Source of the DNA: Chiloscyllium plagiosum | Lineage: Eukaryota | DNA: 64,000 nucleotides | Direction: 5' to 3' | NCBI RefSeq assembly: GCF_004010195.1 | Contig: NC_057726.1 | Span: 61,731,835 to 61,795,834 of the forward strand | In this document: positions 6,929-38,533 of the stretch, in pieces | How the letters are laid out: each line of letters opens with the position of its first letter | How positions within the stretch are numbered: position 1 is the first letter of the stretch | Program-made: the position numbers and the translations under genes | The notes under the pieces: generated by a model | Told to the model about the DNA's origin: nothing | Database searches by the model: none | Seen by the model: only the letters and a program-made list of their open reading frames with translations

Positions 6929-7078
6929 TTAAATTCTCAGCTTCTTGGCATTCTCTGTCACCTTTATTTCTGCATATAATGCGGAATTTTCTTGCTGTTT
7001 AGGTCTTGATGCTCTCTTGGAATCAGCTATTTGCAGAGTCGCATAAGTAAGCTTGTTATCTTCACTTCCTTGCTTGGT
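6929..7078 (-). CDS. Terminal cytoplasmic exon with ITIM LTYATL and ITIM-like ALYAEI
   Basis: Acceptor ttcctttcacag|, phase 0. Translates TKQGSEDNKLTYATLQIADSKRASRPKQQENSALYAEIKVTENAKKLRI*, stop TAA at 6931-6929. Confidence 0.9.
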   Translation of the reverse strand, partial: TKQGSEDNKLTYATLQIADSKRASRPKQQENSALYAEIKVTENAKKLRI

Positions 7079-10000
7079 CTGTGAAAGGAACATTTTTTCA
7101 CTCGTTAGACCATCGTCAATTCATTACGAGGTTTTATTCAAAAGACTTTAGTGGAATTTCCTCTCATCAGTTACAATTTGGGCTTAGTATTATTTTCTGT
7201 GTCTGATTTCTGTCCACACTAGAGCCCTGACCTCAAAATTCTTGTTATTCTGGTTTGAACTTCTCGCAAACTGCGTAAGTATATCAACATTGCCCATTTA
7301 GGCGAACTGGATATTGCTTCAATTGAAAAAGCAGCGGAATCAAATTCCAGTGTGTTAAATGTGATTGGAACGTTGATATTGCAAACATCCTTTCAAGGCC
7401 CAGTTTCCGAGCCGTAACAGCTAATGTGATCTGTTTATCCCATGGAGAGGCCTCACGTCATACGTTTCAACTACCTTTATCCCTTGACTGCTGATCTTCC
7501 GAACCCTGGGAACCACGGCAAATATAGTAGGTATTGGCTGAGATGGTCGGACCCAGCACAGTTGGAAAGTTAAACCTGGGGCCTTTCAATTCCCTAAAGT
7601 TTAATATACATTGAAGGTGTTACAATAAGTGATAAAATTGCTCGTGATCATAGTCAGTACTCTCTTTGCCTGTCTGTTCCTATTTTTCCTGAGTGGACAA
7701 GGCAGGCAGAATGGTGCTTGTTCTCAATGCTAATGTTGCCCGTATACCTGTAAACTCGATACTTGCCACTCGTATCAGCTAAGTTTAATTTGTTATAGCT
7801 CAGGACCATCATTATTATTGCTAATTCACGAAAGGAAACATAGATAACCGAGATTGTATTCTAGCCTAAAACTAATCTTAATAGCCCACTGCCGGTTGAT
7901 GGCTCCCCTGATTTGTATGGACGACCAAATCAGCAGGAGAAAAGTTGTCAAATCCCGAACAATTGCTTTATTTTGTCCTTTTTTTGCTATGGTATAAGAA
8001 TGTCAGTGACAATGTCAGTATTTGTTTCCCATCGCTATTTGCCTTGAACTGAGTGTCTTGGTAAGCCATTTCGAATAGTCGTTAAATATCAATCACGTGG
8101 CTGAGTGACTAGAGTCATATGTCAGCCAGGCCAGGTAAATAAAGGAGCAGCAGGTTTCCTTCCTGAAAGGAAATTACTAACATGCAAGCAAGGAACAAGA
8201 GCAAGCCACTCGGCCCTTCAAGCATGTGCCATCATTCAATGACGTCGTGTTTGACGTGACTGCATTCTCAACTCTACATTCCTGCATCCGCTACTCATCT
8301 TCCTGAAAGGAAATTACCAACATGCAAATAAGGAATATGAGCAAGCCACTCGGCCCTTCAAGCCTATGCCATCAGTTACTGAGGTCGTGTTTGACCTCAC
8401 TGTATTCTCAACTCTACATTCCTGCACCCGCAACTCACCTTGACTCCCCCAACGCCCCCGTCCCACCTCCCATAAACTTTCGACTGCTTAATAAACGAAA
8501 ATCTGTCTACCTGGCCTTAAAAATATTTAAAGTTTCTTCATCCACTGCCTTTTGAATAAGGCAATTCCAAAGTCTCATAACTCTATGAGAGAAACCAAAA
8601 AGAAATCTTCATCACTATTTTAAATAGACGGTCCTTTATTTTTAAACTATGACCTCTTCTCCCAAGAAAGGAAAGATCCTTTCAACGTCCAGCTGGTCAA
8701 CTCTGTCAGGATCTTAGATGTTTCAATTAAATAATCTCTGACACTTCCAAACTCCTGAGGATAGCTATTGTATAGCCTATAGTCTACAAAATGAAGCAAA
8801 AACTCAAAAATGAGGTGGGAGTAAAGAATCATGGGAAGCCAGGAAATTGTACAATATTTGAGTGAACGCTTCGCATCAGTTTTCACAGTAGACAGTAACA
8901 GCATTCCAAATTACTAAACAATCAAAGGAAAAAGGAAGAGTGGGATAAATTTAACAACTATCACTGGAGAGAAAGAAATGTCAGGGAAACTAGTAGTTCA
9001 TATAAATTAATAAGTCCCCTCGACCTGATGGGATATATCCTAGGATATCAAAACAATATCTATAGTACTGGATGAATCAGTAATAATTTTCCATAAAACC
9101 TTAGGTTCTGAAGAAAACTCCGAGAGGGCTTTAAATTTGCCAAAATAACATTTTTATTTAAAAGGGAAGGAGACAATAATAGGTAAATATAGGCCAGGCA
9201 GCTGAACATCCGTTATTGGGGAAATGTTTCAGTGTATTATAAAGGAGGCATGGTATTTCGACGTGCATGATTCTTAAGCAGAGTCAGCATGGATTCATTT
9301 AGGGGTAACCATACATTAAGTTATTTAACCAAATAAAAGCCATGGTCTTGGGGATAGTAGATTAATATGGATTGAACATTGACTTATTACTAGAAGCCTG
9401 AGATTTAGGATGGGGGCAGTGCATTTTCATAATGGAAATCTGGAACTCGTGGAGTGCCACAGGGATTAGTACTAGGGTCACAATTTTTCCAAACATGTAT
9501 ATTAAATACTTAGATACAGAAAGTGCATGCACAGTGGCTAATTTTATGTATAACATTAAAGTAGGTTGGATTGCGAGTTGTGAGAGTGACGCAGGTTTTT
9601 ACAGGGAGTTGGCAGATGGAGTATAATGTAAGAAATGTGAGGTTATGTAGTGTAGCAGGAGGAAAAGAGGTGCGTACTATTCCTTAAATGCAAGACAGCA
9701 GAAAGCTACGGAAGAGACTGATTTGGGATTCTCACGCATAAATCGCAAAAAAACTAGCACCGGGTTTTTGCAGATTTTAAAGAAGGCAAATTAAATGTTG
9801 CCCTTCATTTTAAAGGGGATGGAGTATAAAAGTAGGAATATTTGCCAAAACTAAACAAAGCACGAGTTCGAACATGGCTGGAATATTCTGAATAGTTTTG
9901 TTTCCCTTCTCTCAGAAAAAATATATTGACGTTGGAGGCACTCCAGACAAGGTTCACTGGCTGATACCGGGAATTGAGGAAATGTGTTCTGAAGTGAGGT

Positions 10001-13000
10001 TGAGTAGTCTGGGCCTGTACTCATTGAAATTTAGAAGAATTAGAGATGACCTGATTGAAACAGACAGGATTCTGAGGGGAATTGATGGGATAAATGTGGA
10101 GTTTTTTTTTTCCCATGTGAGAGAGTCTAGGACCAGACGGCATAATTTCAAAATAAGTGGTTGCATATTTAAAACAGAGATGAGGAGAAACTTCTTCTTT
10201 GCAAGGATAATGAACCTTTCCAATTATTTCCTACAAATGTTGTCTCAGTTGGGTCATTGAGAATATTTAAGCCTAAGGTAGATTTTTAGTTAGTAAAGAA
10301 AAGCATTGATGCAGAGAAGGGGCAGAAAAGTGGTTTGGAAGCTTGTCAGGTCAGTCCTGATCTCATTGGAATATGGAATGGACTCGATGGTCTAAATAAA
10401 TTGCTTATTTTTTGTTAATTTGTTCACAATATGTGAACATCACTGGCTAGGCCAGCATTCATTGTTGATCCCTAATGGCCAAGAGGGCAGTTGAGAATCA
10501 ACTACATTACTGTGGCTCTAGACTCGCATGTAGAGCAGACCAGGTTAGGATAGCAGATTTCCTTCCATTAATTCCGTTAGCAGAAACTTGTCTTATCATC
10601 ATAAGGTCACATACTGGAATCTACTCATCTCGTCATAGTCAACCTTCTCTGAGCTGCTTTAAATGTATAAATATCCTTCTATCAAAAGTATGACCAGTAA
10701 TGTACACAGTACTCCAGATGTTTTCGCACCAAAGGCTTGTACAAATATAGAAGGGAACATTTTCTTTTCGATAACAATTGATGGCAGTTAGCATGTTCAA
10801 TATTACTGAGACTAGCTTTACATTCCAAAATAATGGATTGAAATTACGTTCCATTAGTTGCTTCAGTGGGATTTGAGCCTGTGTCCTCATATTATTAACC
10901 TTTGCAATTGGATTACCATCACGCGTTCTGCTCCATGAAGTCAAAATTACAGCATACACTTCCGTTTGTACTACACTGTTTTTTGAAACTTGACTCCATT
11001 ATCACAATATTAACCTCGCATGGCTGTGACTTGACAATTCTTCCACCTTACCTCGGAATAGAGAGTGTGTTCTTCCTTCTGACTGTGTTTGGAGGGAGCT
11101 TTGTTGGCTTTCATGTTTACAATAGCAGAGGCGACGCTTTCTTCAGTTGGTCCTTGTCTAAGCTAAGAAAATAAGACATTGGTAAGCTGCAGAAGGTTCA
11201 GAAGAGATTTACCAGGATGTTGTCGCATATGTAAGTTTTGAGGTATCAAGAAAACTTGGATAGTTTTGGATTTTTTCCACTGGAACATAGGAGGTTGAGA
11301 GGTAACCTTTTACAACCTCATAAAATAGTGAAGGGTATAGATAGAAATAATAGTAGTTGCCGTTTCTCTAGGATGCGGGATTTCAGTACGAGAGGGCACA
11401 TTTTCAACGTGAGATGAGAAAGATTTTACAAAAGACAGGTGCATTTTTTTTTATTCACGTGAGGAATGAACTTCCTGAGGAAGTAGTAGATGTGCGTACA
11501 ATTACAACGTTTAAAAGATATTTTTATAAGAACATGAATAAGAAATATTTGGAGGGATATGAGCATGCAGATGGGACTAGTTTGGTTGGGATTACAATCG
11601 GCATGGACGGGTTTATATGTTCCGTGTCCCACTCCAGCCACTGTTTTTGGAAGGTGTCAAGGTCTTTGAGACGGTAAAATAGAGATTTACTGGAAGGGTC
11701 CCTAATAATCTGGGGAGAGTTTTTTATTTCTGCAGACCGTTGCAGTAGGCTGCCCACAAAGAGAGTTTGATAGAAAAAGGAATTGGATTGAAACGAGAGG
11801 ATGAAATAAATAGCGTGACAGTGGAACAAATTGACTCATTTCAAAAGGCGACAGAGACACGGGATTTTCACCCCGTGCTATGGAGTTCTATTTTCTAGGT
11901 TCTAGGACACGTAAGTGTTTTCGACTGAATATAAAATTCATTGCTATTCTTGCTATGTGTCCGGCTCCGCAACCATTTTTGTTAGGACTTTCAAGAATAA
12001 TGTTGCCCTACCCGCTCGTCATTCTGACCCTCTTCCATCGAACTCCTCCCTTTGCCTAATAGAAAGCAAAGGAATGCACCGTTAATAACACACTCCTTGT
12101 ATCATCAAATGTAATATAATCTCTTCGCTGCCAGAAACATTTACTTTATGTGGAGTACGGAAACCTACAGTTCAAAGGTGTTCAGCAACATTAATTGCAG
12201 TTTGATGTGTTTTAACAGCGCATTGCTCACATCGCGCTGCACCTAATGTTTTCGAATATGTCTCCGTATGATAGTGCAAAATGTGAGTCGATGGCCCATT
12301 TACAACATAGCATTACATTGGAAATAAAATCTAAGAATTTGCATATCTGGTTGTCAGTTCTAAAACACCCACTTTAATGCTGAAAGTTAAAATCCACTTA
12401 ATAAAATTTCCTGTTTAAGAACTAGGCCTGCACTGAACAATAATTGAGAACAATCGTAATTTCGATTGGAGCAATATGGGCATGAATAAACCGGGTGAAT
12501 AGTTCGAATAACAAGGTTAAATATTTGGATTTCAAATCCTCGTTAGATTCTCATCGCCACCATTTAAAGACATAGCCCTTGATGTCTCAACTACTCTTCA
12601 TGCTTTCCCACTGGATCTAAGTAAATACATATTCTGCGAAATAAGAAAGATTCTTACCAGCCGATGCCTTTAATTTGAGTTTCACGAAATATATTATGAA
12701 TAGCAACATTGCCAATGCCCCTCCTGCACATCCAAATATCGTCGGAAGATGGATACCTTCATATACAGGATGAAAACATGATGGAAGTCAACACGTGTGG
12801 AACACAGATAGTTACATGCGGAGAACATCATGCGCACGATGATAAATTGCAAAGACGTATCCCAGGAAAACCCGCTGTCAGTAAAGGCGGAACGTTTTAA
12901 TTTCGGTGGGAATAGCTCTGCAAGGGCTTTACTGTGTATCTGAGGACGTCACCTGCAGTTCAGCATTTTATGGAGAATGCATACATTTCATGACTTAAAG

Positions 13001-16000
13001 GCACGGGAAACTTCTCGCTGTATCGGAGGATTGCTTGCTTTGAGTAAAGGAGTTTGCATTTATTTGCTCATGGTCTTAAACCAGACTGACGCACAACAGC
13101 TGCAAGATCTGGCAACGTTTTCAATTCCTAATCGCGGCATAAAGGAAGATAAACAACAGGAACAGGGTGTGGACATTACGACCTTCAAGCATGCTCGACC
13201 ATTCAACTATAAAATGGCTGAACGTCCTCAGCAGTATTTTCTCGCACTGGCTTGATATCATCAAACATCTGGGACATTGTTGATCTCAATATTTCATAAT
13301 CTTAATGACAGAGTTTTCCCAACATTCTCAGGATGCGGGGGTGAGGGGGGTGGGTGGGAAATGTAGTGCAATTCCCAAGACTCTGGTTGAAGACATTCCT
13401 CTTCACTTCAGTCCGAAATGACCAGCGCCTCCCGCTCACCACCCCCCCCCCCCCCCCCCACAAACCTCCAACAATCCACCACCATTGTGGAATCCGCCAG
13501 GGAAAATAACCTTTCTTCATTTAACCTATCGAGACTTGTAAGGATTTTGCATGTTTTGTGACACCCTTCACCAGCCTTCCACAGATAACACCGACGACAA
13601 TTTTTGTTATATATAATAAGAACAACTTGCAATTTGCTGAGTCTTTAACAGGACTAAAATACTTGTAAGTCACTTCGCAGAGCATTACCAGTCAAACATA
13701 AGTGATCTTAGGACAGAGAGAAATAAGGATAAAGAACCGCCTTAAAGAAGGATCGGCGCAGTGGGAGACTGAGAGGCCGGACTTTTCCAAGTTTATGGTA
13801 CAGGCAACTGAAGACGTTGTTGGTGAAGATTAGCTGAATAGGATAAAGGATATGCATGAACAAGTTGTATCTGCACATTCATTTCATTTAACAAAAAATA
13901 ATTGTGGAGTTTTCAACGTTTGCGTAGTTTTCGCAACAATTCCCATTTCAGTTTATTTTGGGGATCTATTCGCCTTCCTGCACCTGCAAGCTATCTTCCA
14001 ATATTTTACTTTGTTTCCATTTTTGTGGCATTGAGAATGAATACCGGTCACATTTACGCGATATGTTCGAGTAATCTTAGTCCAATGCCTTAAAAATACA
14101 GATATAAGGTCAGCCCCACCCATCACACCCCCAACTCCCTGTTGGGAATATTTTCAATCTTACCTCGATTAACAGTGTAGCTGACGCTGGCGAGCTCTTC
14201 AAGACAGTTATGAGATGCCTGGCAGGTATAAACTGCACCGCTCTGCACAGGCTGCGCTTCTTCCAACGAGCTAGTAACCTCATAGAGCCCATCCAAAGTC
14301 TTGTTTTTCACAGTTTGTATTCGGGCCTGAATTTCGACGCCATTTCTTAGCCAGGAGATTCTTAAATCCTCCGGGTAAAAGGCTGTAGTTTTACATTCGA
14401 ATTTCCAATAATTCCCTGAAATCCCTTCCACGGCAACGATTTTCTGGAGTGTTGGGGAGACTACAACAGAAATTAAAACATTTTTTAAAAAATCAGCTTA
14501 CATTCTTTTTTTCCCCATCCTCCAGAATGCACCTTTCCTCGCCCCATGTTATGCTGCTCCATTCCGAGTGCGTCAATTGTGTTCATTGTTATCCTATTTT
14601 AAACTTGCTTTTTGCATTTATTTTTAAAAGTGCAGGGCAAAACGTTGGTATGTTTTTCAATTTGTTTACAGCGCGGTTGAACATGGGGAAGAAAATCTTT
14701 TATAAAATGCAAGTCTTACATAATCCTAGAGGTTTACCCTTCTGTAAGTGAATTCGATTTGTTCAACATGTTTTTTCCCCTTGGATGAGATTGTGGCTGG
14801 AGTGAGTTAAGAATTAGGAGCTGAAGCAGACCGTTCCAATGGGAAGGTCTTTGGACCCTTTGAGCCTGATCCAACAGTTGATAAGATCATGTCTGTGTCG
14901 TTTGTGTTTCTGATTCATATGCCCGTCTTCGCCTGAATCCCCCCGAAAATATCAATTCTACATTAACAGTTTACTAAAGCGAACGTGTGCTCTCTCGATC
15001 TGCAATCAGTGCTTAGCTGGAAGTAAAGTTACTAGATTTGTATTGTCCTGCTGTTTATTACAATCAATATCGGTAACATCTGACCTCTGTCTCCTGATGG
15101 TTCTCGAATTTCAATATGAGGGAATTTTTAAATGAGATTTCTTATTCACTTCCAAATTCATGCTAGCTTTTACTGCGAGCAAAGGCTGAGAATTCTGACA
15201 TTTTCCCCAGGGATAGGCTTCAAACAGCACATAATTCCCGTGGAGAAAATTAATAGTATTATTTTGATCTCCTGTCCTTAGGTCTTGTTGCAACGAAATA
15301 ATACATTATAAGCACGAGCGCAAAGTTTAAAAAAAATCTGTTTGGTTCAGTCCTTGCTGCACTTCGTGCCTGCATCAGAGAAAGTTCAGTTGGCGAGCTA
15401 CAGAGGTCCAAACAGAGGCAATGGGTAACTTCACTGTCCTGTAAACTTAAGAACTGGGGATCAACCAGGCTGAACAGTTGTTATCTCACTGTATCACGTG
15501 ATTCGCTTGTTTAAACAAATTGACATTTCAAGCATGTTAGCATTGGAAAAATGTGCAGCTAAACGCGAGGCAATTCTGACCTTGAATTTCTCTCATTAAT
15601 AGAATCATAGAATCCCTGCAGTATGGAAGCAGGCCATTCTGCCCATCGGGTCCACACCACCACAACTTACTCTGCTGCTCACTTAAGTTATGGTTGAATT
15701 GTATCTCAGTTCCGTTTGTCCAGTTTTATTCTAATACGTTGATTCCCAGCACTAATTTCCCTCGACATCCATCTCAGAGTTTGAACAATTCAGTACAATT
15801 CGAAAAGTTATACGATTTGAATTAACACTGAATGTATATTATGGGTGCTGATTACATGGTCTTCATAAATTTGTATAAAGAAATGATGTAGGAGTTGTCA
15901 ACATTATTCTGATGAAAGATTATGACCTTAAACATTAATTATGCTTTGATTATCAGTAAGTCCAAGGGTATCAGGTGGAGAGGAAAGTGCAGTTGAAACC

Positions 16001-19000
16001 ATAGTCAGACAGCCAAAATTTTATTGAGTGACTGAGTGAACTGGAGGGACGAATGGCCTACTCTAGCTTCTAATTCTCATGCTTGTATTACCTCTGCAGA
16101 AGCTCTGACACGTTTCAAGTAACCTTTATTAATATTTCACGTTTCCAATACCCGCACTAGTCTGTTTTTGTAATAACATCATGTCCATTGTTGTATTTTA
16201 GTACTTTAGTAAGAGGTAGACCGAACATCTTAACTCGTGACACAAGAACAGAACCGTCCTGAAGAAGGATCATTGGACTCTGAACGTTAGCTCACACAGA
16301 TGCTGCCAGACCTGCGGCGTTTTTCCGGCAATTTCTATCTTTGTTTCAGATTTCCAGCATCCGCAGTTCTTCGTTCTATCTTATTCCATGAAGTAATTTC
16401 GTCCCAAGATTTAATTAGTCATCCTGTTTCACTATTTTGGCGCAATGTCAACTATTTTTGCAACAGAAAGTCACTCGTTGGATTAACAGCACTGTGCTGT
16501 GTCATGATCAATACGGGCGATGGAATTGATCGTGAGAAATGCCGTTTAACGGGCGAAAGCGAATCAACAACCGTTGTACAGCGAGGTCAACAGAAAAATA
16601 GATGCCCCGGACAGTGCGAAGCGAATACGCTGTTGCTGGATTTTCCTCTTATTGTAAAGCCTCAGATCACATAAATTGCACAAAACAACTGAAGATTGCC
16701 TGCCCCTGGTAAAGTGTCACTTACCACACACAGTCAGCAACGAGCCACTTCCAGCTCCAATGATGGTTTGCTGACGCCTGAGTTTGCAAAAATACATTCC
16801 GGAGTCTGCAATAGTGACATTGAGAACATGAAGTGAGCTCCGTCCTTTCTCGACATGTATTGGCTTTCTGCTGTCCGGTTCTAGAAGCGATTCCTCATTA
16901 CGTCGCCACCAAAATATTTCAGGAACGTCTTGAAATATGGGAAAAGTGCAGAACATGGAAACATTGTCACCTCTGGCCGCTTTCAATTGTTTGGGAAACT
17001 GATCCACTTTGCTCGAGGTTACTTTAGTGACTATTAAAAAAGAACAGAAACCGTGACACTAGTTGTAGAAGCAGAGAAGGTAAAACAACAGAGTAAAATA
17101 CAAGAACAGTGAAGAATGATCACGCACATCGAATTGGGGAACCAGAATATCGAACTTTGCAGGGCATAGTAACTGTAAACATCAAATGCAATCAAAGTTA
17201 TTCTAAAAGGACAGCTCATAATATTTAAGGGTCACAAAAGTGCCAAGGCATACCCAGAAGAGCCATGAACAGAACCGCTACTCTCGCCGACATATTGCTG
17301 ATATGGAAACAGAGTTGGCTCCTTGCTGTAAATGAGGGTAGTACTTTGAATGGTTGGGGGTGGGAGGAAGGGGAAGTGGGTGTCAAAGATAAGAATAGTA
17401 AACGTGAGAGCATGTCATGAGATATCACTTGACTACTGCAGCGTACTGGATGTAATTGTACTTCTCTGTGGGAATTTGTTAGGTTGGAGGTCCATTCCAA
17501 ACCCCCTGCGAGAGAATTAACCAAAGGGGGAAAAAAGTAGTTGATCTCATCCTTATCAATCTGCCGGCTGCAGATGAATCTGTCCATGACAATATTGCTA
17601 CGAGTGAGCACTGCACTGTCCTTGTGGAGACATTGTCCCACTTACAAATTGAGAATACCCTCCATCGTGTTGTGTGGTACAATTCACTGTGCTACATTGG
17701 ACAGATTTAAAACCGATCTAACAGCTTAAGAATGGATACCCGTGAGGCGCTGTGGATAATCACCAATAGCAGAATTGTATTGCAGCATAATCTACAACCT
17801 AATGGCCCGGCATTTCCCTCGCTCAGCAATTAAGATTAAGCCAGGGGGCTGACACTAGTTCAAAGGAGAATGCAGGAGCACATGCTAGGAGCAATACCCA
17901 GAAAATCCCAGATGGCCCCCTTCTTCAATAATTGCAATTTCCCCTCCTATGTGGTCGCCAATGCCCTCCAGCACAACTCTTCCATTTCACTAACCTCTGC
18001 CCTTTAACAGCAGCCCTCTCAACCCCCCGGTCCTTACCTTCCACCCAACCAACCTGGTCAGATACAACCCCCCCCCCCCGCCCTCCACCAGCCCACACCC
18101 TACTCCCAGCACCTTCCCCTGCCACTGCACGATGTGCAAAACCTGAGCCCACAACTTCCCACTCACCTCCACCCAAGGACTCTGAGGATCCTTCGTCATT
18201 CGAAAGCCATTTACCTGCTCCACTCACACCACACTCCCCACCCACACCACACTCACCACCCACTCCACTCACACCACACTCCCCACCCACACCACACTCC
18301 CCACCCACACCACACGCCCCACTCACTCCACACTCCCCACTCACTTCACACTCCCTAACCACACCACACTCCTCACCCACCCCACCCACACCACACTCCC
18401 CACCCACCCCACTCCCAGCACCTTCCCCTGCCACTGCACGATGTGCAAAACCTGAGCCCACAACTTCCCACTCACCTCCACCCAAGGACTCTGAGGATCC
18501 TTCGTCATTCGAAAGCCATTTACCTGCTCCTTCCCCAATGATATTTACTGCATCCATTGCACCTGATGTCATATCTTCTACGTCTGGGAGACAGGATGCT
18601 AACTTGCAGATAATTTTAGAGAACAACCCCACCTCCCCATAGCTGAATACTTCAACTCTCCCTCCCACCCCACCAAGGACGTGCAGGTCCTGGACCTCCA
18701 CCATTACCAAACCCTTACTACCCGATGCCTGGAGGAAGAATGCCTCAAATTTCGCCTTGGGATCCTGCAACCACATGGGATCAATATGGATTTCACCAGT
18801 TTCGTCATTGCCCCTCCCTCCACATTATCCCAGTCCCGAGCCTCCAACTTAGCAAAGCCCTCTTGACATGTGCATCCCCTTTCTGATATGTCTGCTCTAT
18901 CCTCCTCTCCTACCTATCACATTCTCAGCTACCTTCCCCCAACCCCTCTCCCATTTACATCTTGCAACCACTCCCCAGCCAGCAAGTCTCATTCCTGATG

Positions 19001-22000: not shown

Positions 22001-25000
22001 TCTACTGTCTTCCTCATTAGGCTCTGCTTCCAGCCAATTTTTGTCAGTTCCTCTCATGCCCCAGTAATTACCTTTATTTAACTATTACACCATTACATCC
22101 GATTTTGCCTTCTCTCTTTCAAACTGCGGACTGAACTCTACCATATTATGGTCACTGCCTCCTAAGTGTTCCCTTCCTTTACGATCTTTTATAAAGTCTG
22201 GCTCATTACATAGCACTAAGTCCAGAATAGCCTGTTCCTTGTGAGTTCCATCACATGCCGTTCCAAAAGGTCATCGTGTAAACATTCCATGAATTCCCCT
22301 CCTTTGGATCCACCGTCACTGCCTCCTAAGTGTTCCCTTCCTTTACGATCTTTTATAAAGTCTGGCTCATTACATAGCACTAAGTCCAGAATAGCCTGCT
22401 CCCTTGTGAGTTCCATCACATGCCGTTCCAAAAGGTCATCGTGTAAACTTTCCATGAATTCCCCTCCTTTGGATCCACCGGCAATATAATTTACCCAGCC
22501 CATCTGCGTAATAAAGCCCCCCATGATCACCGTGACATTGCCTTTCTGACATGCCCTATCTATTTCCTCGTACATCTTGCGCCCCTGGTCCTGACCAGTG
22601 CTGGGAGGTCTGTACATAACTCCCATTATGTTTTTTTTTGTCTTTGTGGTTTCTCAACTGCACCTACACAGACTCCACATCATCTGACCCTCTGGCATTC
22701 AGTGCCATAGATTTCATTTCATTCTTAACTAACAGGGCAACCCTGCCCGGTCTGCCCAACTCCTTGTATTTTAGATAAGTTGTAAATCCTTGGATGCTTA
22801 ACTGCCAGCCCTGAACTGCCTGCAAATACATCTCTCTCATGCCTCCCACATTATAATGATTCACGAGGATTGATAAAGCACCTGAATGCTAACTTTCTTA
22901 TTCTCATGATTTCCAACAGTAATAGGTCCGAAGTTATCCTTCCTTTTTGTTTCATTCCTAGTCTGCCTTGAACTTCAACCCTGCACACATGCTAACATAC
23001 TGCTTATCTTTCTACTTGACTCCGTACTCCGTGTTGCTTTCCCTTTCCTTAACCCCCCCCCCCCCCCCCCCCCCGACTCGCAGTTTAAAGTCCGAGTGAC
23101 AACCCTATTTATCTTTTTTGCGAGAACACTGGTTCCAGATCGGGTCGGGTGGAGACCATCTCATCAGTACAGATCGCCCCGGTTCGAAAACTGATGCCAA
23201 TGTGCCGTGAAATGGAATCCCTCTTTCTCACACCAATCTCTTAACCACTTGTTTACTTCCCGAATGTTCTTATCCCTATGCTCAGGCAGTAATCCAGATT
23301 ATAACACTTGAACACTTGTTCTTCAATTTCCTTCCTGATGCTTGATACTCCCCAAACAGGTCCTCCTTCCTAGCCTTGCCTATGTTGTTAGTGCCAACAT
23401 GGAACACAACAACTAAATCTTCTCCATCCCGCTCCAATATCCTTTCAAGCCAGTCAGAAATGTCCTGCACCCTGGGACCGCGCAGGCAACACACCATGTG
23501 TGACTCCCAATCCGACTCGCAAAGGATACTATCTGTCCCCCTAATTATGGAATCCCCTATAACAACTACTTGTCGTTTTGCTCCCCCCTCTTGAATGGCC
23601 TTCTGCACCAGGGTGCCGTGGTCAGCTGGCTCATTCTGGCCTCAGTCTTTTTCATCCATACAGAGAGAAAATTAGATTAGATTAGATTCGATTACTTACA
23701 GTGTGGAAACAGGCCCTTCGGCCCAACATGTCCACACCAACCCGCCGAAGCGCAACCCACCCATACCCCTACATTTACCCCTGCACCTAACACTACGGGC
23801 AATTTAGCATGGCCAATTCACCTGACCTGCACATCTTTGGACTGTGGGAGGAAACCGGAGCACCCGGAGGAAACCCACGCAGACACGGGGAGAACGTGCA
23901 AACTCCACACAGTCAGGCGCCTGAGTCGGGAATTGAACCCGGGTCTCTGGCGCTGTGAGGCAGCAGTGCTAACCACTGTGCCACCGTGCCCCCCCACAAA
24001 ATATCTCATACCTGTTTGACAAGGCCAAGGGCTTGAGGATCCTCCACTCCTGAGCTCAGAATCCCCTTACCTGTCTCACTTACAGTTGTTCCTGATCACT
24101 AACTGAACTTGAATTACTTAATCTACCGGTTGGACCTGTTGGACTATAACCTGGCGTTGTGTGAATTTCAACTTTGCACATCCCAGTCAAACACTGGCAC
24201 CAACAAATCATGACTCAATCATTATAATAATGATGAACAGCCACCCTCAGACAACAACTCACCAGAACGAAGGACCCGATACCCAGCATGAGCAAAAGTA
24301 ATGTAGTGTACAAAATCCCGTGCAAGGACTGCACAAGACACTATGTAGGACAAACAGGAAGACAGCTAACGATCCGCATCCATGAACATCAACTAGCCAC
24401 GAAACGACACGACCAGAAATCCTTAGTAGCCACACACGCAGATGATAAGCAACATGAATTCGACTGGGACAATACTACCATTGTAGGGCAAGCCAAACAA
24501 AGAACCGACAGGGAATTCCTAGAAGCATGGCACTCATCCACAAACTCCATCAACAAACACATCGACCTGGACCCAATATACCGGCCACTACAGCGGACAG
24601 CTGAAACTGACAACCGGAAGCGGCAGGGACAGGCCACTATAAATGCCGGAGGAAACACCACAGAAGCGCTTCACAGGAGGCTCCCAAGCACTGAGGATGT
24701 CACCTAGACAGGGGACGAAACGTTTGCAACAAAAATTTCCAGCTCGGCGAACAGAACCACAACAATGATGGAAGATGCCATCAGCAGTGCTAACCAGTAT
24801 CATCTGCTCATTATAACCTGCTCATTGCCGCTCAGTTTGGGTTCTGCCAGGGCCACTTAACTCTTGACCTCACTACAGCCTTGGTCTGAACGTGAACAAA
24901 AGAGCTGTAGTCGAAACGTGAGGTGAGAGTGACAACCCTTGACATCAAGGCCATATTCGACCAAGTGTGGCATCAAGAGTCCGTGCAAAACTGGAATCAA

Positions 25001-28000
25001 TGGATATCAGGGGGCAAACTCTCCGTTGGTTTGAGTCATACCTGGCACATATGAAGATGTTTGCATTTGTTGGAGGTTAGTTATCTCTGCGCCAGAACAT
25101 CTCTGCAGGAATTGTTCAATTTAGTGTCAAAATCCAAACATCTTCAGCTGCTTCATCAATGACCTTCATTCCATCATAAGGCCTGAACTGGGAATATTCA
25201 CCAATGTTTTCATAAGGTTCCACAACTTTTATGACTCTTCAGACCATGAAGCAACCAGATCTGGACAATATTAAGGCTCGGGCTGATAAATGTAGGTAAC
25301 ATTCACACCACAGAAAGACAAAGCAATGACCACATCGAATAATAGACAACCACTGCCCTTGACATTTGATGGTGTTACCATCACTGAATCGCTGTAATCA
25401 ATACCCTGGGGTTATCATTGACTAGACATTCAACTGGACTCACCACGAAAATACAATGACTGCAAGAGCTGCATAGACATGAGGAATGCAGCAGCGAATA
25501 ACTCAGCACCAGACTCAACAAAACCTGTCCACCATCTGTAAGGTACATGTCATGAATGTGATGGGATATTCCTTAATTTACCTGGATGTCTGTGGCTCAA
25601 ACAGCTCTGAATAAGCTTGATATCATCCATGACAATATCATCCAAATCGTTGGCACCACATCCACAGACACCTGTTCACGAATCTGCACCAACAATCAGT
25701 AGCAACAGCGTCCACCATCTAGAGGATGCACTGCAGAACTGCATCAAAGATCTTTCGCACGTCCCAAAACCTCGATCATGCCATCTAGAACGACAAATGC
25801 GGCAGATATGAGGGAACACGTATAAGTTCTAAGCAACCGCCTGAGGGCATTGTGGATCACTGTACAGCACGTGGACAGTACATCACCAACTTCTCAAGGG
25901 CAGTTATAAATGATGGCCAGCCAGTGACACCCATATTGTATGTCCCACGAGTTATTTAAAAAAGGCCTCATGTTCACAAACATCTTTTCTCTGTACTATG
26001 CTTTTCAGGTTCTCATATAATAGGCATGATTCACATGACATGAAGCGCTCTTCTAGTGTTCTCACCAACATAGTTCAGAAATGGCATTTCCAGATTATCT
26101 AACTGTTGTGCATGTCATTCAACGGATTATTGTTTGCCCTTCATTTCAACAGCGTGGATGTGTATGCAAGTCATTTCGTTCATCTACTGCTGGTAGTAAT
26201 ATTTTGCAATGAACAAATTTGTTTCCTTCCAGCTTTGTCTCTGGCACAAACAGAGATATTTCAAAAGTGACCTTATGAAATGCAATGTAAGAGTAAAGTT
26301 TGCTTATTTCACCAAGGTGACATACCTGACGTGTGTGAAATTGATTGGAATTTAGCATTTCCCAATGACACTTGTAAGTTACAGAACTCAATGCACATGA
26401 AGCACATTATTATGAAGGGATGGTCATAGCATTAAGCTGTAATTTTTTCTCACCATTGTCTGCATTTCCCAATATAAATCCAGAGCTAGAATTTTGGTGG
26501 AATTCAGAACAACGATTGAGAGTTCTACAACTGATTCTCGATACCCCGGAGGTCTAACATCACAACACTTGACACAGCAGCCCCAGGTCTTTGGCAACCA
26601 CCAGAATGCTTGGGTACATTAATAACTATTGGTTGTGTGTTTCCCTTTGCACAAAATAACTGTGTAAGTGAAGATGACAGACATGAACCAAACAACAGGA
26701 TACAGCGTCATTTTGCTTTTGTGTTATTCAGTAGTCAGCGCAGAGATCTACTTATAGATGTGATACTATACTAATATCTTATGACAGTAGACAATAGACA
26801 ATAGGTGCAGGAGTAGGCCATTCTGCCCTTTGAGCCTGCACCACCTTTCATTATGATCATGGTTGATCATCCTCAATCAGTATCCTGTTCCCGCCTTATC
26901 TCCATAACCCTTGATTCCACTATCCTTGAGAGCTCTATCCAACTCTTTCTTAAACGGATCCAGAGACTGGGCCTCCACAGCCCTCTGGGGCAGAGCATTC
27001 CACACACCCACCAGTCTCTGGGTGAAGAAGTTTCTCATTCCAGGAATTGACCTCGTGAACCTATGCTCCCCTCCCTCAATAGCCAGAATGTCTTTCCTCA
27101 CATTTGGAGACCAGAACTTCACACAACATTCCAGGTGCGGTCTCATCAGGGCCCTGTACAGCTGCAGAAGAACCTCTTTGCTTCTATACTCAATTCCTCT
27201 TGTTATGTAGGCCATCATGCTATTAGTTTTCTTCACTACTTGCTGTACCTGCATGCTTGCCTTCATTGACTGGTGTACAAGAACACTCAGATCTCTTTGT
27301 ACTGCCCCTTTACCTGACTTGACTCCATTTAGGTAGTAATCTGCCTTCCTGTTCTTGCCACCAAAGTGTATAACCATACATTTATCCACATGAAACTGCA
27401 TCTGCCATGCATCCGTCTACTCACCTAACCTGTCCAGGTCACCCTGTAATCTCCTAACATCCTCCTCACGTTTCACCCTGCCCACCCAGCTTTGTATCAT
27501 CAGAAAATTTTCTAATGTTACTATTAATACCATCTTCAATATCATTAATATATATTGTAAAAAGCTGTGGTCCCAGCACTGATCCTTGCGGTACCCCACT
27601 GGTCACTGCCTGCCATTGTGAAAGGGAGCCGTTTATCACTACTCTTTGTTTACTGTCAGCCAACCAATTTTTAATCCAAGTCAGTACTTTGCCCCCAATA
27701 CAATGCGCCCTAATCTTGCTCACTAACCTCCTAGGTGGGACTTTATCAAAGGCGTTCTGAAAGTCCAGGCACACCACATTCACTGGATCTCCCTTGTCTA
27801 TCTTCAGAGTTACACCCTCAAAAAATTCCAGAAGATTAGTCAAGCATGGTTTCCCCTTCATAAATTCATGCTGACTCTGACCTATCCTGTTACTGCTATC
27901 CAGATGCGTCGTAATTTCATCCTTTATAATTGACTCCAGCATCTTTCCCACCACTGAGGTCAGACTAACTGGCCTATAATTTCCTGCTTTCTCTCTCGCT

Positions 28001-28251
28001 CCTTTCTTAAAAGGTGGTGCAACATTAGCCACCCTCAAATCCGCAGGAACTGATCCTGAATCTATCGAAACTCTGGAAGATAATCATGTGTTGATTGTGT
28101 CTTGGCTCGTGTTCAGCCCTCAATCAACCTCACTGAAGTATGTTATGTGTTCATATAATGTTTCCGTCTGCGGGACATTTTGATGTACAGCGTGAGTACC
28201 ATATTTCCAAAATGACAGTAACAGCATGACAAATGTAGACATTTCGAACAT
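6929..28251 (-). CDS. Spliced gene (7 coding exons, 352 aa): SIRP-like, non-rearranging VJ-C1-TM inhibitory Ig-superfamily receptor
   Basis: Manually assembled exons 28251-28200, 17030-16725, 14460-14164, 12756-12658, 12055-12012, 11162-11052 and 7078-6929. All junctions are GT-AG, with intron phases 1,1,1,1,0,0. Total 1059 nt = 352 aa + stop with no internal stop. Domain order: leader, V, C1, TM, tyrosine-motif tail. Exact orthology (SIRP, NCR3LG1/B7-H6-like or a VJ-C1 family) cannot be fixed without a search. Confidence 0.85.
8159..8440 (+). repeat. Local tandem duplication with a 140-bp period
   Basis: cttcctgaaaggaaattac..acatgcaa..gagcaagccactcggcccttcaagc..ctcaactctacattcctgca starts at both 8159 and 8299. 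The copies are diverged. Confidence 0.85.
8790..10410 (+). mobile_element. Degenerate CR1 LINE (ORF2 remnant and 3' end) in the last intron
   Basis: ORF 9898-10260 contains RLSSLGLYSLKFRRIRDDLIETDRILRG..RTRRHNFKI..MRRNFF, the CR1 ORF2 C-terminus. Confidence 0.8.
11052..11162 (-). CDS. Cytoplasmic exon 2 LRQGPTEESVASAIVNMKANKAPSKHSQKEEHTLYSE
   Basis: Acceptor tttcttag| and donor GAG|gtaagg, 111 nt, phase 0/0. Aligns without gaps to the terminal exon. Confidence 0.85.
11175..11630 (+). mobile_element. CR1 3' fragment
   Basis: gaaggttcagaagagatttaccaggatgttg..aggaggttgagaggtaacc..ggaatgaacttcctgaggaagt, CR1 ORF2 end. Confidence 0.75.
12012..12055 (-). CDS. Cytoplasmic exon 1 (G)KGRSSMEEGQNDER
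   Basis: Acceptor ctttgctttctattag| and donor |gtaggg. Its 44 nt convert phase 1 to phase 0, as required to join the next exon. Confidence 0.8.
12658..12756 (-). CDS. Transmembrane exon (G)IHLPTIFGCAGGALAMLLFIIYFVKLKLKASA
   Basis: Acceptor ...atatgaag| and donor G|gtaaga, 99 nt, phase 1/1. Hydrophobic stretch of about 21 aa with no charged residue, followed by basic stop-transfer KLKLK. Confidence 0.9.
14164..14460 (-). CDS. Ig C1-set domain exon
   Basis: Acceptor tctgttgtag| and donor G|gtaaga, phase 1/1. Motifs FECKTTAFYPEDLRISWLRNG, DGLYEVTSSL and YTCQASH are typical of C1 (CxxxxFYP, W, YxCxxxH). Confidence 0.95.
16725..17030 (-). CDS. Ig V-set (VJ-type) domain exon
   Basis: Acceptor ttttttaatag| and donor G|gtaagt, phase 1/1. 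Translation TKVTSSKVDQFPKQLKAARGDNVSMFCTFP..IFWWR..SSLHVLNVTIADSGMYFCKLRRQQTIIGAGSGSLLTVC has the B-strand Cys, C-strand Trp, DSGxYxC and a J-like GxGSxLTV motif. Confidence 0.95.
17920..19120 (+). mobile_element. Penelope-like element 3' fragment (GIY-YIG remnant and pLTR) with internal duplication and C/A-rich simple repeat
   Basis: GIY-YIG-like remnant around 18500-18640. The pLTR ends ..ctgctgcctgacctgctg..tccagcatctgca..actttctcc. About 120 bp is duplicated (18103-18221 and 18412-18530) around a (CCACACCACACTCC)-like array. Confidence 0.75.
19899..24130 (-). mobile_element. Long CR1 LINE (ORF1 esterase, ORF2 endonuclease and RT), decayed
   Basis: ORF1 SGNH-esterase motifs VVVIGDSIIRGTD..VVFHVGTNN (23282-23608), endonuclease GVMYRPP..ILDLVL, RT DVVYLDFQKAFDKVPH, and a (cataagac)n tail at about 19899-19921. 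Internal 164-bp tandem duplication at 22151-22478. Confidence 0.92.
23672..23990 (-). mobile_element. HE1-type tRNA-derived SINE, full length
   Basis: On the minus strand the head reads ggcacggtggcacagtggttagcactgctgcctcacagcgccagagacccgggttcaattccc (A/B boxes), with a CR1-like tail and (tctaa)n end. Confidence 0.9.
24235..24765 (+). mobile_element. Penelope/Poseidon-type element 3' fragment (GIY-YIG endonuclease and pLTR)
   Basis: ORF 24288-24707 contains NVVYKIPCKDCTRHYVGQTGRQLTIRIHEH..REFLEAWH. A hammerhead motif lies at 24688-24727. Confidence 0.92.
24688..24727 (+). ncRNA. Minimal type I hammerhead-ribozyme motif in a Penelope pLTR
   Basis: GCA-CUGAGGA-U-GUC.ACCU.AGAC.AGGG.GAC-GAAACGUU-UGC: core boxes CUGANGA and GAAA, stem II GUC/GAC plus CCU/AGG, stem I GCA/UGC, palindromic ACGU stem III. 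Equivalent copies at 37953-37992 (-) and 38456-38495 (+). Confidence 0.65.
26786..28085 (-). mobile_element. Relatively young CR1 LINE 3' fragment with an internal deletion
   Basis: RT ORFs GNYRPVSLTSVVGKMLE..LDFQNAFDKVP..GVPQGSVLGP..FSDDTKLGG, and a (caataga)n tail at about 26790. Deletion junction near 27040. Confidence 0.92.
28200..28251 (-). CDS. Candidate leader exon MFEMSTFVMLLLSFWKY (phase 1)
   Basis: ATG at 28251 and hydrophobic core FVMLLLSFW. The phase-1 donor G|gtactc is a weak consensus but joins in frame to VTKVTS|SKVDQ, giving a plausible signal-peptidase site. An upstream acceptor ctctgcag| at 28262 suggests a further 5'-UTR exon. Confidence 0.6.
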
Positions 28252-37878: not shown

Positions 37879-38533
37879 CAAAGTTTGTGAGAAGATTTGT
37901 AGCTCGGGTGCTCGTTGCTGTGGTTCTGTTCGCCGAGCTGGAAGTTTTTGTTGCAAACGTTTCGTCCCCTGTCTAGGTGACATCCTCAGTGCTTGGGAGC
38001 CTCCTGTGAAGCGCTTCTGTGGTGTTTCCTCCGGCATTTATAGTGGCCTGTCCCTGCCACTTCCGGTTGTCAGTTTCAGCTGTCCGCTGTAGTGGCCGGT
38101 ATATTGGGTCCAGGTCGATGTGTTTGTTGATGGAGTTTGTGGATGAGTGCCATGCTTCTAGGAATTCCCTGGCTGTTCTTTGTTTCGCTTGCCCTATAAT
38201 GGTAGTGTTGTCCCAGCCAAATTCATGTTGCTTGTCGTCTGCGTATGTGGCTNNNNNNNNNNNNNNNNNNNNNNNNNNNNNNNNNNNNNNNNNNNNNNNN
38301 NNNNNNNNNNNNNNNNNNNNNNNNNNNNNNNNNNNNNNNNNNNNNNNNNNNNNNNNNNNNNNNNNCAGCTGAAACTGACAACCGGAAGCGGCAGGGACAG
38401 GCCACTATAAATGCCGGAGGAAACACCACAGAAGCGCTTCACAGGAGGCTCCCAAGCACTGAGGATGTCACCTAGACACGGGACGAAACGTTTGCAACAA
38501 AAACTTCCAGCTCGGCGAACAGAACCACAACAG
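37879..38533. mobile_element. Inverted (tails-out) Penelope insertion spanning an assembly gap
   Basis: The left arm (-) and right arm (+) both match the 24235-24765 family. 13-bp TSD tagctgaacgatt at 37866-37878 and 38534-38546. Confidence 0.88.

What the first reader, a model, noticed from the sequence alone, without database searches (positions are those of the whole stretch)
6929..28251. Shark non-rearranging 'antigen-receptor-shaped' inhibitory receptor: germline VJ + C1 + TM + SIRP-like tyrosine tail
Seen: seven phase-compatible exons give an intact 352-aa ORF. Its V exon already contains a J-like G strand (GAGSGSLLTV), I found no RSS or separate J segment, and it is followed by a single C1 domain. 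Established: V(J)-C1 is the TCR/Ig light-chain module. Outside antigen receptors and MHC, C1 domains occur in few families (SIRP, tapasin, some B7 members), and mammalian SIRPalpha is V-C1-C1 with paired ITIM-type motifs. Inference: this is a compact one-C1, SIRP-like inhibitory receptor in a cartilaginous fish, relevant to pre-RAG antigen-receptor ancestry and to self-recognition checkpoints. The ORF track shows only two fragments of it.
Basis: partly seen in the sequence, partly recalled or inferred. Interest (0 to 1): 0.85.

Follow-up and report, generated by a model that had tools for sequence, protein, structure and literature searches.

The report
Shark V-C1 inhibitory receptor gene
This is an intact gene for a cell-surface immune receptor built like one un-rearranged antigen-receptor chain, and it is one copy of a large shark, ray and chimaera gene family that databases loosely label SIRP-like and that I could not find described in print.

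Summary
The core of the finding is real. On the minus strand lie a V exon with a built-in J-like G strand (17030-16725), one C1-set exon (14460-14164), a TM exon (12756-12658) and three tail exons ending at 6929. All are open, phase-compatible and bounded by AG/GT. No RSS-like site occurs in the window.

- The leader at 28251 has no homology support. A leader at 17293-17236, 205 nt upstream of the V exon, matches the N-termini of relatives (11 of 19 residues identical to a Heterodontus protein). The gene then spans about 10.4 kb, not 21 kb.
- Exon 5 more likely starts at 12055 than at 12049.

The gene is not unique. It belongs to a multigene family seen here in 17 chondrichthyan species. NCBI auto-names its members SIRP-alpha-like, SIRP-beta-like, B7-H6-like, tapasin-related-like, Ig-lambda-like or TCR-beta-like. 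The family has ITIM-tailed members and short-tailed members with a charged TM. This copy is the inhibitory type.

Affinity to SIRP is suggested by a C1 tree but is not robust (AU p=0.36). I obtained no RNA evidence, and my ten paper searches found no description of the family. Earlier notes of this scan report many more such genes elsewhere in this genome.

The parts
17236..17293 (-). Leader exon (my model): ATG at 17293, 19 codons plus 1 base, donor GTGACC, 205-nt intron to the V exon
   Evidence: Searches give the sequence and the phase-1 donor. In one search it aligns with family N-termini: 58% identity to P0151 and 53% to P0169.
16725..17030 (-). V exon: end of the signal peptide plus a short V domain, with a J-like G strand (AGSGSLLTV) inside the same exon
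   Evidence: sequence. V-set 2e-9, I-set 5.5e-9; 62% identity to P0012; model pLDDT 92.1, with VNAR, CD79b, TCR V, SIRP V and NKp30 among the structural matches.
14164..14460 (-). C1-set exon (FYP; 13 residues between Cys B and Trp C; C-Q-A-S-H after Cys F)
   Evidence: C1-set 5.9e-11; 96% identity to C. punctatum P0001; pLDDT 89.9, with MHC II beta2 and beta2-microglobulin folds as top matches.
12658..12756 (-). Stalk and transmembrane exon (IFGCAGGALAMLLFIIYFV, no charged residue in the core)
   Evidence: 71% identity to the P0012 TM segment.
12012..12055 (-). Small cytoplasmic exon (phase 1 to phase 0).
   Evidence: The length matches the corresponding 15-residue segment of P0151.
11046..11162 (-). 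Cytoplasmic exon, a duplicate of the last exon's module. Ser replaces the ITIM tyrosine (VASAIV); HTLYSE is kept.
   Evidence: (self-match, E 0.021), and (matches to P0012 and P0090 tails).
6929..7078 (-). Last coding exon: LTYATL (canonical ITIM), ALYAEI 23 residues later, stop TAA at 6931-6929
   Evidence: 55% identity to the P0012 tail, with hits from 8 further relatives.
28200..28251 (-).
   Evidence: donor GTACTC; no alignment with family N-termini; RT ORF in the proposed intron.
35132..35384 (-). Decayed relic of a paralogue (V-like and C1-like pieces with in-frame stops)
   Evidence: (tblastn with family proteins, E 2.5e-4 to 0.07).
56048..56360 (-). Decayed C1-like exon relic with stops
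   Evidence: weak hits, E about 0.01-0.6, all in the same place and order.

Best explanation
The region holds an intact-looking, germline-joined (non-rearranging) IgSF receptor gene. Its parts in order are a split leader, one short V domain with a J-like G strand, one C1-set domain, a stalk and uncharged TM, and a cytoplasmic tail built of duplicated tyrosine-motif modules.

It is one copy of a chondrichthyan multigene family. That family has long-tailed ITIM members and short-tailed members with an Arg...Asp-His transmembrane segment, which makes it a paired inhibitory/activating family of the SIRP, KIR or NITR kind.

This copy is the inhibitory type. My inferred mechanism is as follows. The V domain binds an unknown ligand. 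Src-family kinases phosphorylate LTYATL and ALYAEI. These motifs lie 23 residues apart, a spacing that I recall as suited to tandem SH2 domains. SHP-1/SHP-2-type phosphatases are then recruited and damp activation of the cell that carries the receptor.

Shown here: exon structure, domain types, family membership and motif presence. Inferred: expression, ligand binding, phosphorylation and phosphatase recruitment.
For: - Exons and phases.
- Domain types: Pfam; PDB; models with pLDDT 92.1 and 89.9; VNAR/TCR-V-like and MHC-II-beta2/beta2m-like folds.
- C1 hallmarks as listed by Hatherley 2009 (PMC2785349, passages read) are all present: FYP, 13 residues from Cys to Trp, and x-V-x-H, here Q-A-S-H.
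- Family by HMMER: with the C1 exon, 598 proteins reach E<=1e-3. The top single-C1 hits are 40-66% identical and have the same V-C1-TM-tail layout.
- Taxonomic range: 31 of 31 hits and 34 of 34 hits are chondrichthyan.
- Window exons: tblastn of 13 relatives finds the V, C1, TM, exon-6 and tail exons at the predicted places.
- V-C1 join: C. punctatum P0001, a 124-aa fragment, carries the same V-to-C1 junction.
- Census of the 98 family-type proteins in hand: 73 have a TM, and 44 of those have at least one canonical ITIM after it. At least 7 have an R...DH TM with a short tail.
- Birth-and-death evolution: two decayed relics lie in the window.
Against: - There is no transcript evidence. In the one read-laying run (window 5171-11170), the two single-cell RNA runs gave 2 and 0 reads. 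Both of those reads were partial and fell in a repeat. The guessed-RNA run touched only repeats. No read crossed the 11046-to-7078 junction. Only about 2% and 6% of the two runs were read, so this is no test of silence.
- The first ITIM module has lost its tyrosine, and the second motif has Ala at position -2, so the motif pair is only half canonical.
- P0001 and the other relatives are gene predictions, not cDNAs.
- No full-length model of this exact gene turned up in the protein collections.
Confidence: 0.72

Rival explanations
1. It is the cartilaginous-fish orthologue of SIRP-alpha itself, a CD47-binding 'don't-eat-me' receptor that has one C1 domain fewer.
For: - NCBI names 6 of the 10 relatives looked up 'tyrosine-protein phosphatase non-receptor type substrate 1-like', and names many more so.
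- The family profile aligns with SIRP-alpha V plus d2 as one stretch (2wng_A, 102 bits).
- The best single-domain PDB score of the C1 exon is to SIRP-gamma (42 bits).
- In the C1 tree the family is sister to pig SIRP d2 plus lungfish SIRP-alpha-like C1 domains (97/83).
Against: - It has one C1 domain, not two.
- It is a many-copy family with diverse V domains, not a conserved single gene.
- Ig lambda chains score about the same against the profile (about 88 bits in a single stretch).
- Against the C1 profile, SIRP d2 and d3, IgL-C and MHC-I alpha3 all score about 42-45 bits.
- The AU test does not reject a tree without the SIRP grouping (p 0.363).
- Synteny could not be examined.
Confidence: 0.1
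2. It is a B7-H6-type ligand (NCR3LG1-like) that is recognised by the expanded shark NKp30 family, rather than a receptor.
For: - NCBI names 7 of the 31 hits 'natural cytotoxicity triggering receptor 3 ligand 1-like'.
- The V-C-TM-tail layout with tyrosine motifs fits B7-H6. This is recalled, not tested.
- A published abstract that I recall but could not read (Flajnik 2012, PMC3709836, not held) says that B7H6 and NKp30 gene numbers co-vary from sharks to mammals.
Against: - The V domain has a J-like G strand. Its first 49 listed structural matches are VNAR, CD79b, NCAM, antibody and TCR V, SIRP V and NKp30 chains, with no B7-family chain.
- By sequence, B7-H3 and PD-L1 score only 29 and 23 bits.
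- Relatives with an R...DH TM and short tails look like adaptor-coupled receptors.
Confidence: 0.08
3. It is a recently disabled or silent copy in a birth-and-death cluster. The frames are open but the gene is not used.
For: - There is no RNA support.
- The first ITIM tyrosine is lost.
- Two decayed paralogue relics lie in the same window.
- No full-length model of this gene appeared among database hits.
Against: - All seven exons are open, with canonical AG/GT sites.
- All invariant family residues of the V and C1 domains are kept.
- The C. punctatum fragment is 96% identical over the C1 exon.
Confidence: 0.1

Closest known systems
SIRP family (SIRP-alpha, -beta, -gamma)
   Same: - An N-terminal V domain with a J-like G strand is followed by C1-set domains, a TM and a tail with ITIM-type tyrosines.
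- The family has paired inhibitory members and charged-TM members.
- The family profile aligns with SIRP-alpha V plus d2 in one stretch.
- The C1 tree puts the family next to SIRP d2.
   Different: - It has one C1 domain instead of two.
- It is a large, fast-diverging multigene family.
- The V domain is short (101-residue exon, VNAR-like in the model).
- The grouping with SIRP is not robust.
- CD47 binding is unknown.
UrIg and UrIg2 (non-rearranging shark VJ-C1 genes; Flajnik et al. 2025, PMC12227049, sections 4 and 7 read)
   Same: - A single-exon VJ domain with a split leader is followed by C1-type domains.
- It is not rearranged.
- Both are found in elasmobranchs.
- UrIg2 (9dmx_A) is the top PDB hit of the C1 exon by summed score (62.7 bits over three domains).
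   Different: - UrIg has three C domains and is secreted. Nurse shark UrIg2 has nine C domains.
- This gene has one C1 domain and an ITIM tail.
- Each single UrIg2 domain scores only 14-24 bits against the C1 exon.
- The UrIg2-like C domains sit apart in the tree.
- This family is also present in a chimaera (Callorhinchus), whereas the paper speaks of elasmobranchs.
Ig light chains and TCR chains
   Same: The V(J)-C1 order is the same, and TCR chains also have a TM after a single C1 domain. Ig lambda chains align with the family profile over V plus C1 in one stretch at about 88 bits.
   Different: There is no RSS and no separate J segment. The J-like strand lies inside the V exon. The tail carries ITIM motifs. 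V diversity comes from many germline genes, not from rearrangement.
Teleost NITRs and other paired Ig-type NK/myeloid receptors (KIR, LILR). Recalled, not tested here.
   Same: These are also multigene clusters of inhibitory ITIM forms and activating charged-TM forms, with V domains that have J-like motifs and with birth-and-death evolution.
   Different: As I recall, the second domain of NITRs is I-type, not C1-set, and NITRs are confined to bony fish. No sequence comparison was made here.

Membership tests
SIRP family | Ectodomain of one V-set domain followed by two C1-set domains (Hatherley 2009, PMC2785349, passages read) | tested here: not met
   Only one C1 exon lies between the V and TM exons. 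Relatives also have a single C1 domain. The exception is skate P0035, which has two near-identical copies.
SIRP family | C1-set hallmarks: (F/Y)(F/Y/H)P at the BC loop, 13 residues from Cys B to Trp C, and x-V-x-H after Cys F | tested here: met
   The exon translation has FYP, 13 residues (KTTAFYPEDLRIS) and C-Q-A-S-H. Pfam gives C1-set at 5.9e-11. The fold model matches MHC II beta2 and beta2m.
SIRP family | The C1 domain is closest to SIRP C1 domains in a phylogeny | tested here: inconclusive
   The family is sister to pig SIRP d2 plus lungfish domains with 97/83 support (60 rows, 101 columns). The alternative is not rejected (p-AU 0.363). No TCR, IgH, MHC II, beta2m or tapasin domains were in the tree.
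SIRP family | Cytoplasmic ITIMs that recruit SHP-1/SHP-2 (inhibitory member) | tested here: inconclusive
   There is one canonical ITIM (LTYATL) and one ITIM-like motif (ALYAEI) 23 residues apart. Binding is not testable with these tools.
SIRP family | CD47 binding by the V domain; orthologous locus | not testable with these tools
   The window holds no other conserved gene, only repeats and relics.
UrIg / UrIg2 | Single-exon VJ domain with a split leader | tested here: met
   The leader is at 17293-17236, followed by a 205-nt intron, and the J-like strand lies inside the V exon.
UrIg / UrIg2 | Three or more C1-type domains (UrIg 3; UrIg2 9-11 in sharks; PMC12227049 section 7) | tested here: not met
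   There is one C1 exon.
Rearranging antigen receptors (Ig, TCR) | V and J are separate segments flanked by RSS | tested here: not met
   There are 0 RSS-like sites in the 64 kb. The V exon runs through the J-like motif to a splice donor.
B7-H6 (NCR3LG1) | B7-type V domain as the closest V relative | tested here: inconclusive
   No B7-family chain appears among the first 49 listed Foldseek matches of the V model. B7-H3 scores 29 bits and PD-L1 23 bits by sequence. B7-H6 itself was not compared directly.
Unnamed chondrichthyan V-C1 paired-receptor family (NCBI 'SIRP-alpha-like' and other names) | Leader of the form MS..MALLG..W; V domain with WW, DSGxYYC and G-x-G-(S/T)-x-L-x-V; C1 domain with CKTxAFYPE and YTCxxSH; TM; tail modules with LTYAxL and xxYAxx | tested here: met
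   Shown by alignments A1-A4 and by tblastn. Identity to the nearest full-length relative (Heterodontus P0012/P0151) is 62% in V and 63% in C1.

The most novel reading that the evidence does not exclude
The most novel reading not excluded is this. The family is the surviving membrane-bound form of the germline V(J)-C1 unit from which both SIRPs and the rearranging antigen-receptor chains descend. It would be a one-C1, TCR-chain-shaped receptor used as a paired NK- or myeloid-type receptor in all cartilaginous fish. That would give a living model of the 'primitive antigen receptor with V and C1 domains' proposed by Hatherley et al. 2009.
Probability: 0.12. Interest if true: 0.8.

Novelty: new variant of a known kind. 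Interest (0 to 1): 0.5.

Why it matters
C1-set domains are almost confined to antigen receptors, MHC molecules and a few associates. Germline-joined VJ-C1 genes in sharks (UrIg, UrIg2) have recently been put forward as relatives of the gene that the RAG transposon split.

This family is different from those. It has many genes, it occurs across Chondrichthyes including a chimaera, and each member has one V(J) domain, one C1 domain and a TM, which is the shape of a TCR chain. It is wired as inhibitory/activating pairs. If its V and C1 domains prove to branch near SIRP and the antigen receptors, it would add a third kind of non-rearranging relative. It would also offer a testable example of innate, germline-diversified recognition using the antigen-receptor module.

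As a practical point, public annotation names its members inconsistently, with six different names seen here. The gene in this window appears to lack a full-length model in the collections I searched.

Tried and rejected
Rejected for three reasons: a weak donor, 11 kb of repeats containing an RT ORF, and no alignment to family N-termini.
- **Leader donor at 17254 (GTATGC).** Considered and set aside. It would drop the G-M-P-W residues that match the conserved G-x-x-W of relatives.
- **RNA evidence.** The run search found no RNA holder. The single read-laying run on 5171-11170 gave nothing on the exons. I chose the 3' part because the only raw RNA runs were poly-A single-cell libraries. The V-C1 and C1-TM junctions were therefore never laid.
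- **The look-up of encoding contigs.** I could not tell whether that fragment comes from a spliced transcript.
- **Relatives outside Chondrichthyes.** Two word-indexed searches gave none. The second scored only the 8000 candidates sharing the most words and used E<=1e-10, so this does not show absence. The HMMER scan did list tetrapod and lungfish SIRP-type proteins at 63-87 bits summed over 2-3 domains.
- **Synteny.** The window holds no other recognisable gene.
- **Literature.** Ten searches found no description of a shark V-C1-ITIM or SIRP-like family. Three likely sources were not held: Ohta 2019 (PMC6761025), Flajnik 2012 (PMC3709836) and Flajnik 2023 (PMC10530332). Supplements of PMC12227049 were not asked for. 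They may list further VJ-C1 genes, so 'not in print' is not shown.
- **ESM Atlas with the V exon.** It returned only generic V-set/I-set clusters.
- **Joined spliced model.** It was not searched, folded or printed. Lengths were added up instead.

Full report
**What is in the sequence**

The gene lies on the minus strand. I read each exon and its borders directly.

| Exon | Coordinates | Length, phase | Borders and content |
|---|---|---|---|
| V | 17030-16725 | 306 nt, phase 1 at both ends | Starts after ...tttttaatAG. Runs through ...GAGSGSLLTVC to a G\|GTAAGT donor. |
| C1 | 14460-14164 | 297 nt, phase 1/1 | |
| Stalk/TM | 12756-12658 | 99 nt, phase 1/1 | The one strongly hydrophobic open stretch in this interval that relatives later matched. 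|
| Tail exon 6 | 11162-11046 | 117 nt, phase 0/0 | |
| Last exon | 7078-6929 | | LTYATL, ALYAEI and a TAA stop. |

Between the TM exon and 11162 a small exon must turn phase 1 into phase 0. The best candidate is 12055-12012 (44 nt), with a second AG six bases further in, at 12049.

All searches were exon by exon or used natural relatives.

**Domain types**

- Pfam scores the V exon as V-set (2e-9), Ig_3 (3.2e-9) and I-set (5.5e-9). It scores the C1 exon as C1-set (5.9e-11, 43 bits against a cut-off of 21). The TM exon and last exon match nothing.
- Hatherley et al. 2009 (PMC2785349, passages read) list three sequence hallmarks of C1-set domains. The C1 exon has all three:
  - FYP at the BC loop;
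  - exactly 13 residues between the B-strand Cys and the C-strand Trp;
  - C-Q-A-S-H for the C-x-V-x-H motif.
- AlphaFold models built exon by exon on family alignments are confident (pLDDT 92.1 for V and 89.9 for C1).
- The V model is closest to shark VNAR domains (8ft9_A, TM 0.82). Next come CD79b, NCAM Ig1 and TCR V domains, with SIRP-alpha V at rank 36 and NKp30 at rank 41. It is therefore a short V domain of the kind that lacks a full C'' strand.
- The C1 model is closest to MHC class II beta2 domains and beta2-microglobulin.
- The G strand reads A-G-S-G-S-L-L-T-V, which fits G-x-G-(S/T)-x-L-x-V. In relatives it is mostly N-G-(T/S)-G-S-x-L-x-V.
- A scan for RSS-like sites found none in the whole window.

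**The leader**

A scan for ATG-started hydrophobic mini-exons with a phase-1 donor found MSARVAVLFMALLGMPWHF at 17293-17236. This is only 205 nt upstream of the V exon.

Aligned with the N-termini of relatives, it is 58% identical to Heterodontus P0151 (MSVRASVQYMALLGMVWP...) and 53% identical to Scyliorhinus P0169.

I therefore place the start at 17293.

With the 44-nt small exon, whose 15 residues equal the corresponding stretch of P0151 in length, the exon lengths add up to 1068 nt, or 356 codons. The gene spans 6929-17293.

**Relatives**

A full HMMER scan of 1.84 billion representatives with the C1 exon gave 598 proteins at E<=1e-3 and 167 at E<=1e-10.

- The top hit, P0001, is a 124-aa predicted fragment from Chiloscyllium punctatum. 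It is 96% identical over the C1 exon and carries the same V-to-C1 junction. This suggests that the window comes from a closely related carpet shark. That is an inference.
- Many single-C1 hits of 250-420 aa are 40-66% identical. They show the same layout of leader, V, C1, TM and tail.
- Searching with the nearest full-length relative (P0151) gave 31 hits. Searching with a 22-member profile gave 34 hits. All are from cartilaginous fish.
- With this makes 17 species of sharks, rays and the chimaera Callorhinchus.
- The second search scored only the 8000 candidates sharing the most words, so absence elsewhere is not shown.
- NCBI's names for family members are inconsistent: PTPNS1 (SIRP-alpha)-like, SIRP-beta-1-like, NCR3LG1 (B7-H6)-like, tapasin-related-like, Ig lambda-1-like and TCR beta-like.
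- tblastn of 13 relatives against the window finds the V, C1, TM, exon-6 and last exons where I had placed them. It also finds two decayed relics of paralogues, at 35132-35384 and 56048-56360.

**Paired forms**

I made a crude census of the 98 proteins in hand whose C1 domain scores at least 60 bits against the family profile.

- 73 of the 98 have a TM segment.
- 44 of those 73 have at least one canonical ITIM after the TM.
- At least seven distinct proteins (P0013, P0030, P0052, P0072, P0170, P0171, P0179) have an Arg near the outer end of the TM, an Asp-His near its inner end, and a short tail.

This is the pattern of adaptor-coupled activating partners.

The window's gene has an uncharged TM core and a long tail, so it is of the inhibitory type.

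Its tail is modular. Exon 6 is a diverged copy of the last exon's module (E 0.021). In exon 6, Ser stands where relatives have the ITIM tyrosine: VASAIV against VAYASL in Mustelus P0197. The last exon keeps LTYATL and, 23 residues later, ALYAEI.

**Relation to known families**

By sequence, no single family stands out as the closest.

- With the C1 exon, the top PDB entry is UrIg2 (9dmx_A, 62.7 bits). That score is a sum over three domains of 14-24 bits each. The best single-domain scores are SIRP-gamma (42 bits) and IgM constant domains (about 41 bits).
- With the family profile, SIRP-alpha (102 bits, V plus d2 in one stretch), UrIg2 (116 bits over three domains) and Ig lambda chains (about 88 bits in one stretch) are all similar.
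- Against a C1-only family profile, pig SIRP d2 and d3, a lungfish SIRP-alpha-like protein, trout IgL-C and sturgeon MHC-I alpha3 all score about 42-52 bits.

I built a maximum-likelihood tree of 60 C1 domains over 101 columns.

- Included rows: the window's C1, 36 chosen family members, and up to four domains each from eight outside proteins. The outside proteins were named by NCBI or UniProt where a specific name existed. For three of them (a sturgeon 'hypothetical protein', a trout 'Ig-like domain-containing protein' and a white shark 'titin-like' protein) I read the type off the sequence, as MHC-I alpha3, IgL-C and UrIg2-like.
- Left out: about 60 further family proteins and more than 100 unnamed multi-C1 hits.
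- Not available: TCR, IgH, MHC II, beta2m, tapasin and B7-H6 domains.
- Result: the family forms one group (91/90) that is sister to pig SIRP d2 plus the lungfish domains (97/83).
- An AU test does not reject a tree in which the family is instead held with the IgL-C and UrIg2-like domains (p 0.363).

'SIRP-like' therefore stands as a description, not as a demonstrated relationship. The defining V-C1-C1 architecture of SIRP is not met.

**Expression**

No run on record as RNA held the stretch.

My one read-laying run covered the 3' part of the gene (5171-11170), because the only raw RNA runs were poly-A single-cell libraries.

- The two single-cell runs gave 2 and 0 reads. About 2% and 6% of those runs were read. 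The 2 reads were partial and fell in a repeat.
- The guessed-RNA run matched only repeats.
- The DNA run covered 27 of 30 bins.

This is not a test of expression. 

**Literature**

UrIg and UrIg2 are the published non-rearranging shark VJ-C1 genes (PMC12227049, sections 4 and 7 read; PMC10751288, passages). In PMC12227049 the words SIRP and ITIM do not occur.

None of my ten searches found a description of this family. Three relevant papers were not held, and no supplements were seen, so an earlier mention cannot be excluded.

**Earlier notes of this scan**

These are unchecked AI notes.

- One note reports the exon-6 duplication. I confirmed that here.
- Others report paralogues just beyond both ends of the window, and further clusters up to 8 Mb away and on other pieces of this genome.

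The scan has therefore met this family many times on other DNA of this genome.

**Verdict**

It is an inhibitory member of a chondrichthyan V(J)-C1 paired-receptor family that is present in public annotation under misleading names and is apparently undescribed. It is a new variant of a known kind, namely SIRP- or NITR-style paired receptors built from the antigen-receptor module. Interest is moderate.

Noticed in passing
window 35132-35384 (-): This is a decayed relic of a paralogue. A V-like piece (CTFPLFQ...W*HGE) lies directly beside a C1-like piece (SCQMSHNSL), with in-frame stops. The two pieces are far closer together than the V and C1 exons of an intact gene, so it may be an internally deleted or processed copy.
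   Followed up: partly
window 56048-56360 (-): This is a decayed C1-like exon (CRTTQLYPKD ... YICQLSHVSLQ) with stops and a frame change. It is a second relic of the family in the same orientation.
   Followed up: partly
window 17400-28300 (-) and elsewhere (38000-38550, 43259-43648, 45580-46292, 61664-62155): The stretch upstream of the gene is filled with retroelement ORFs on the same strand. One is a clear reverse-transcriptase piece at 27469-28038 (RVT_1, 3.2e-26). Similar repeat ORFs recur through the window, and the two N runs (38253-38365 and 51870-52309) sit inside such repeats.
   Followed up: partly
window 17925-18776 (both strands): This is a GC-rich, low-complexity block with long open frames on both strands (Gly/Val/Glu-rich on one, Pro/Thr/His/Ser-rich on the other). 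It lies about 650 nt upstream of the leader exon and looks like a minisatellite rather than coding sequence.
   Followed up: no
window 16726 (V-C1 boundary) and relatives P0001, P0097, P0123: The V exon ends in a Cys (LLTVC). Most relatives have Tyr, His or Phe at this position. The C. punctatum fragment and two Callorhinchus proteins share the Cys. An unpaired Cys at the hinge could make a disulfide-linked dimer.
   Followed up: no
relatives P0013, P0152, P0170 (short-tailed forms): The short tails of the R...DH transmembrane forms still contain a V-x-Y-x-x-L match (VRYVQL) right after the membrane. My crude ITIM count therefore includes some putative activating forms.
   Followed up: no
relative P0035 (Amblyraja radiata, 493 aa): This family member has two near-identical C1 domains in tandem. 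It is either a very recent exon duplication or an assembly or annotation artefact. It shows how a V-C1-C1 layout could arise from V-C1.
   Followed up: no
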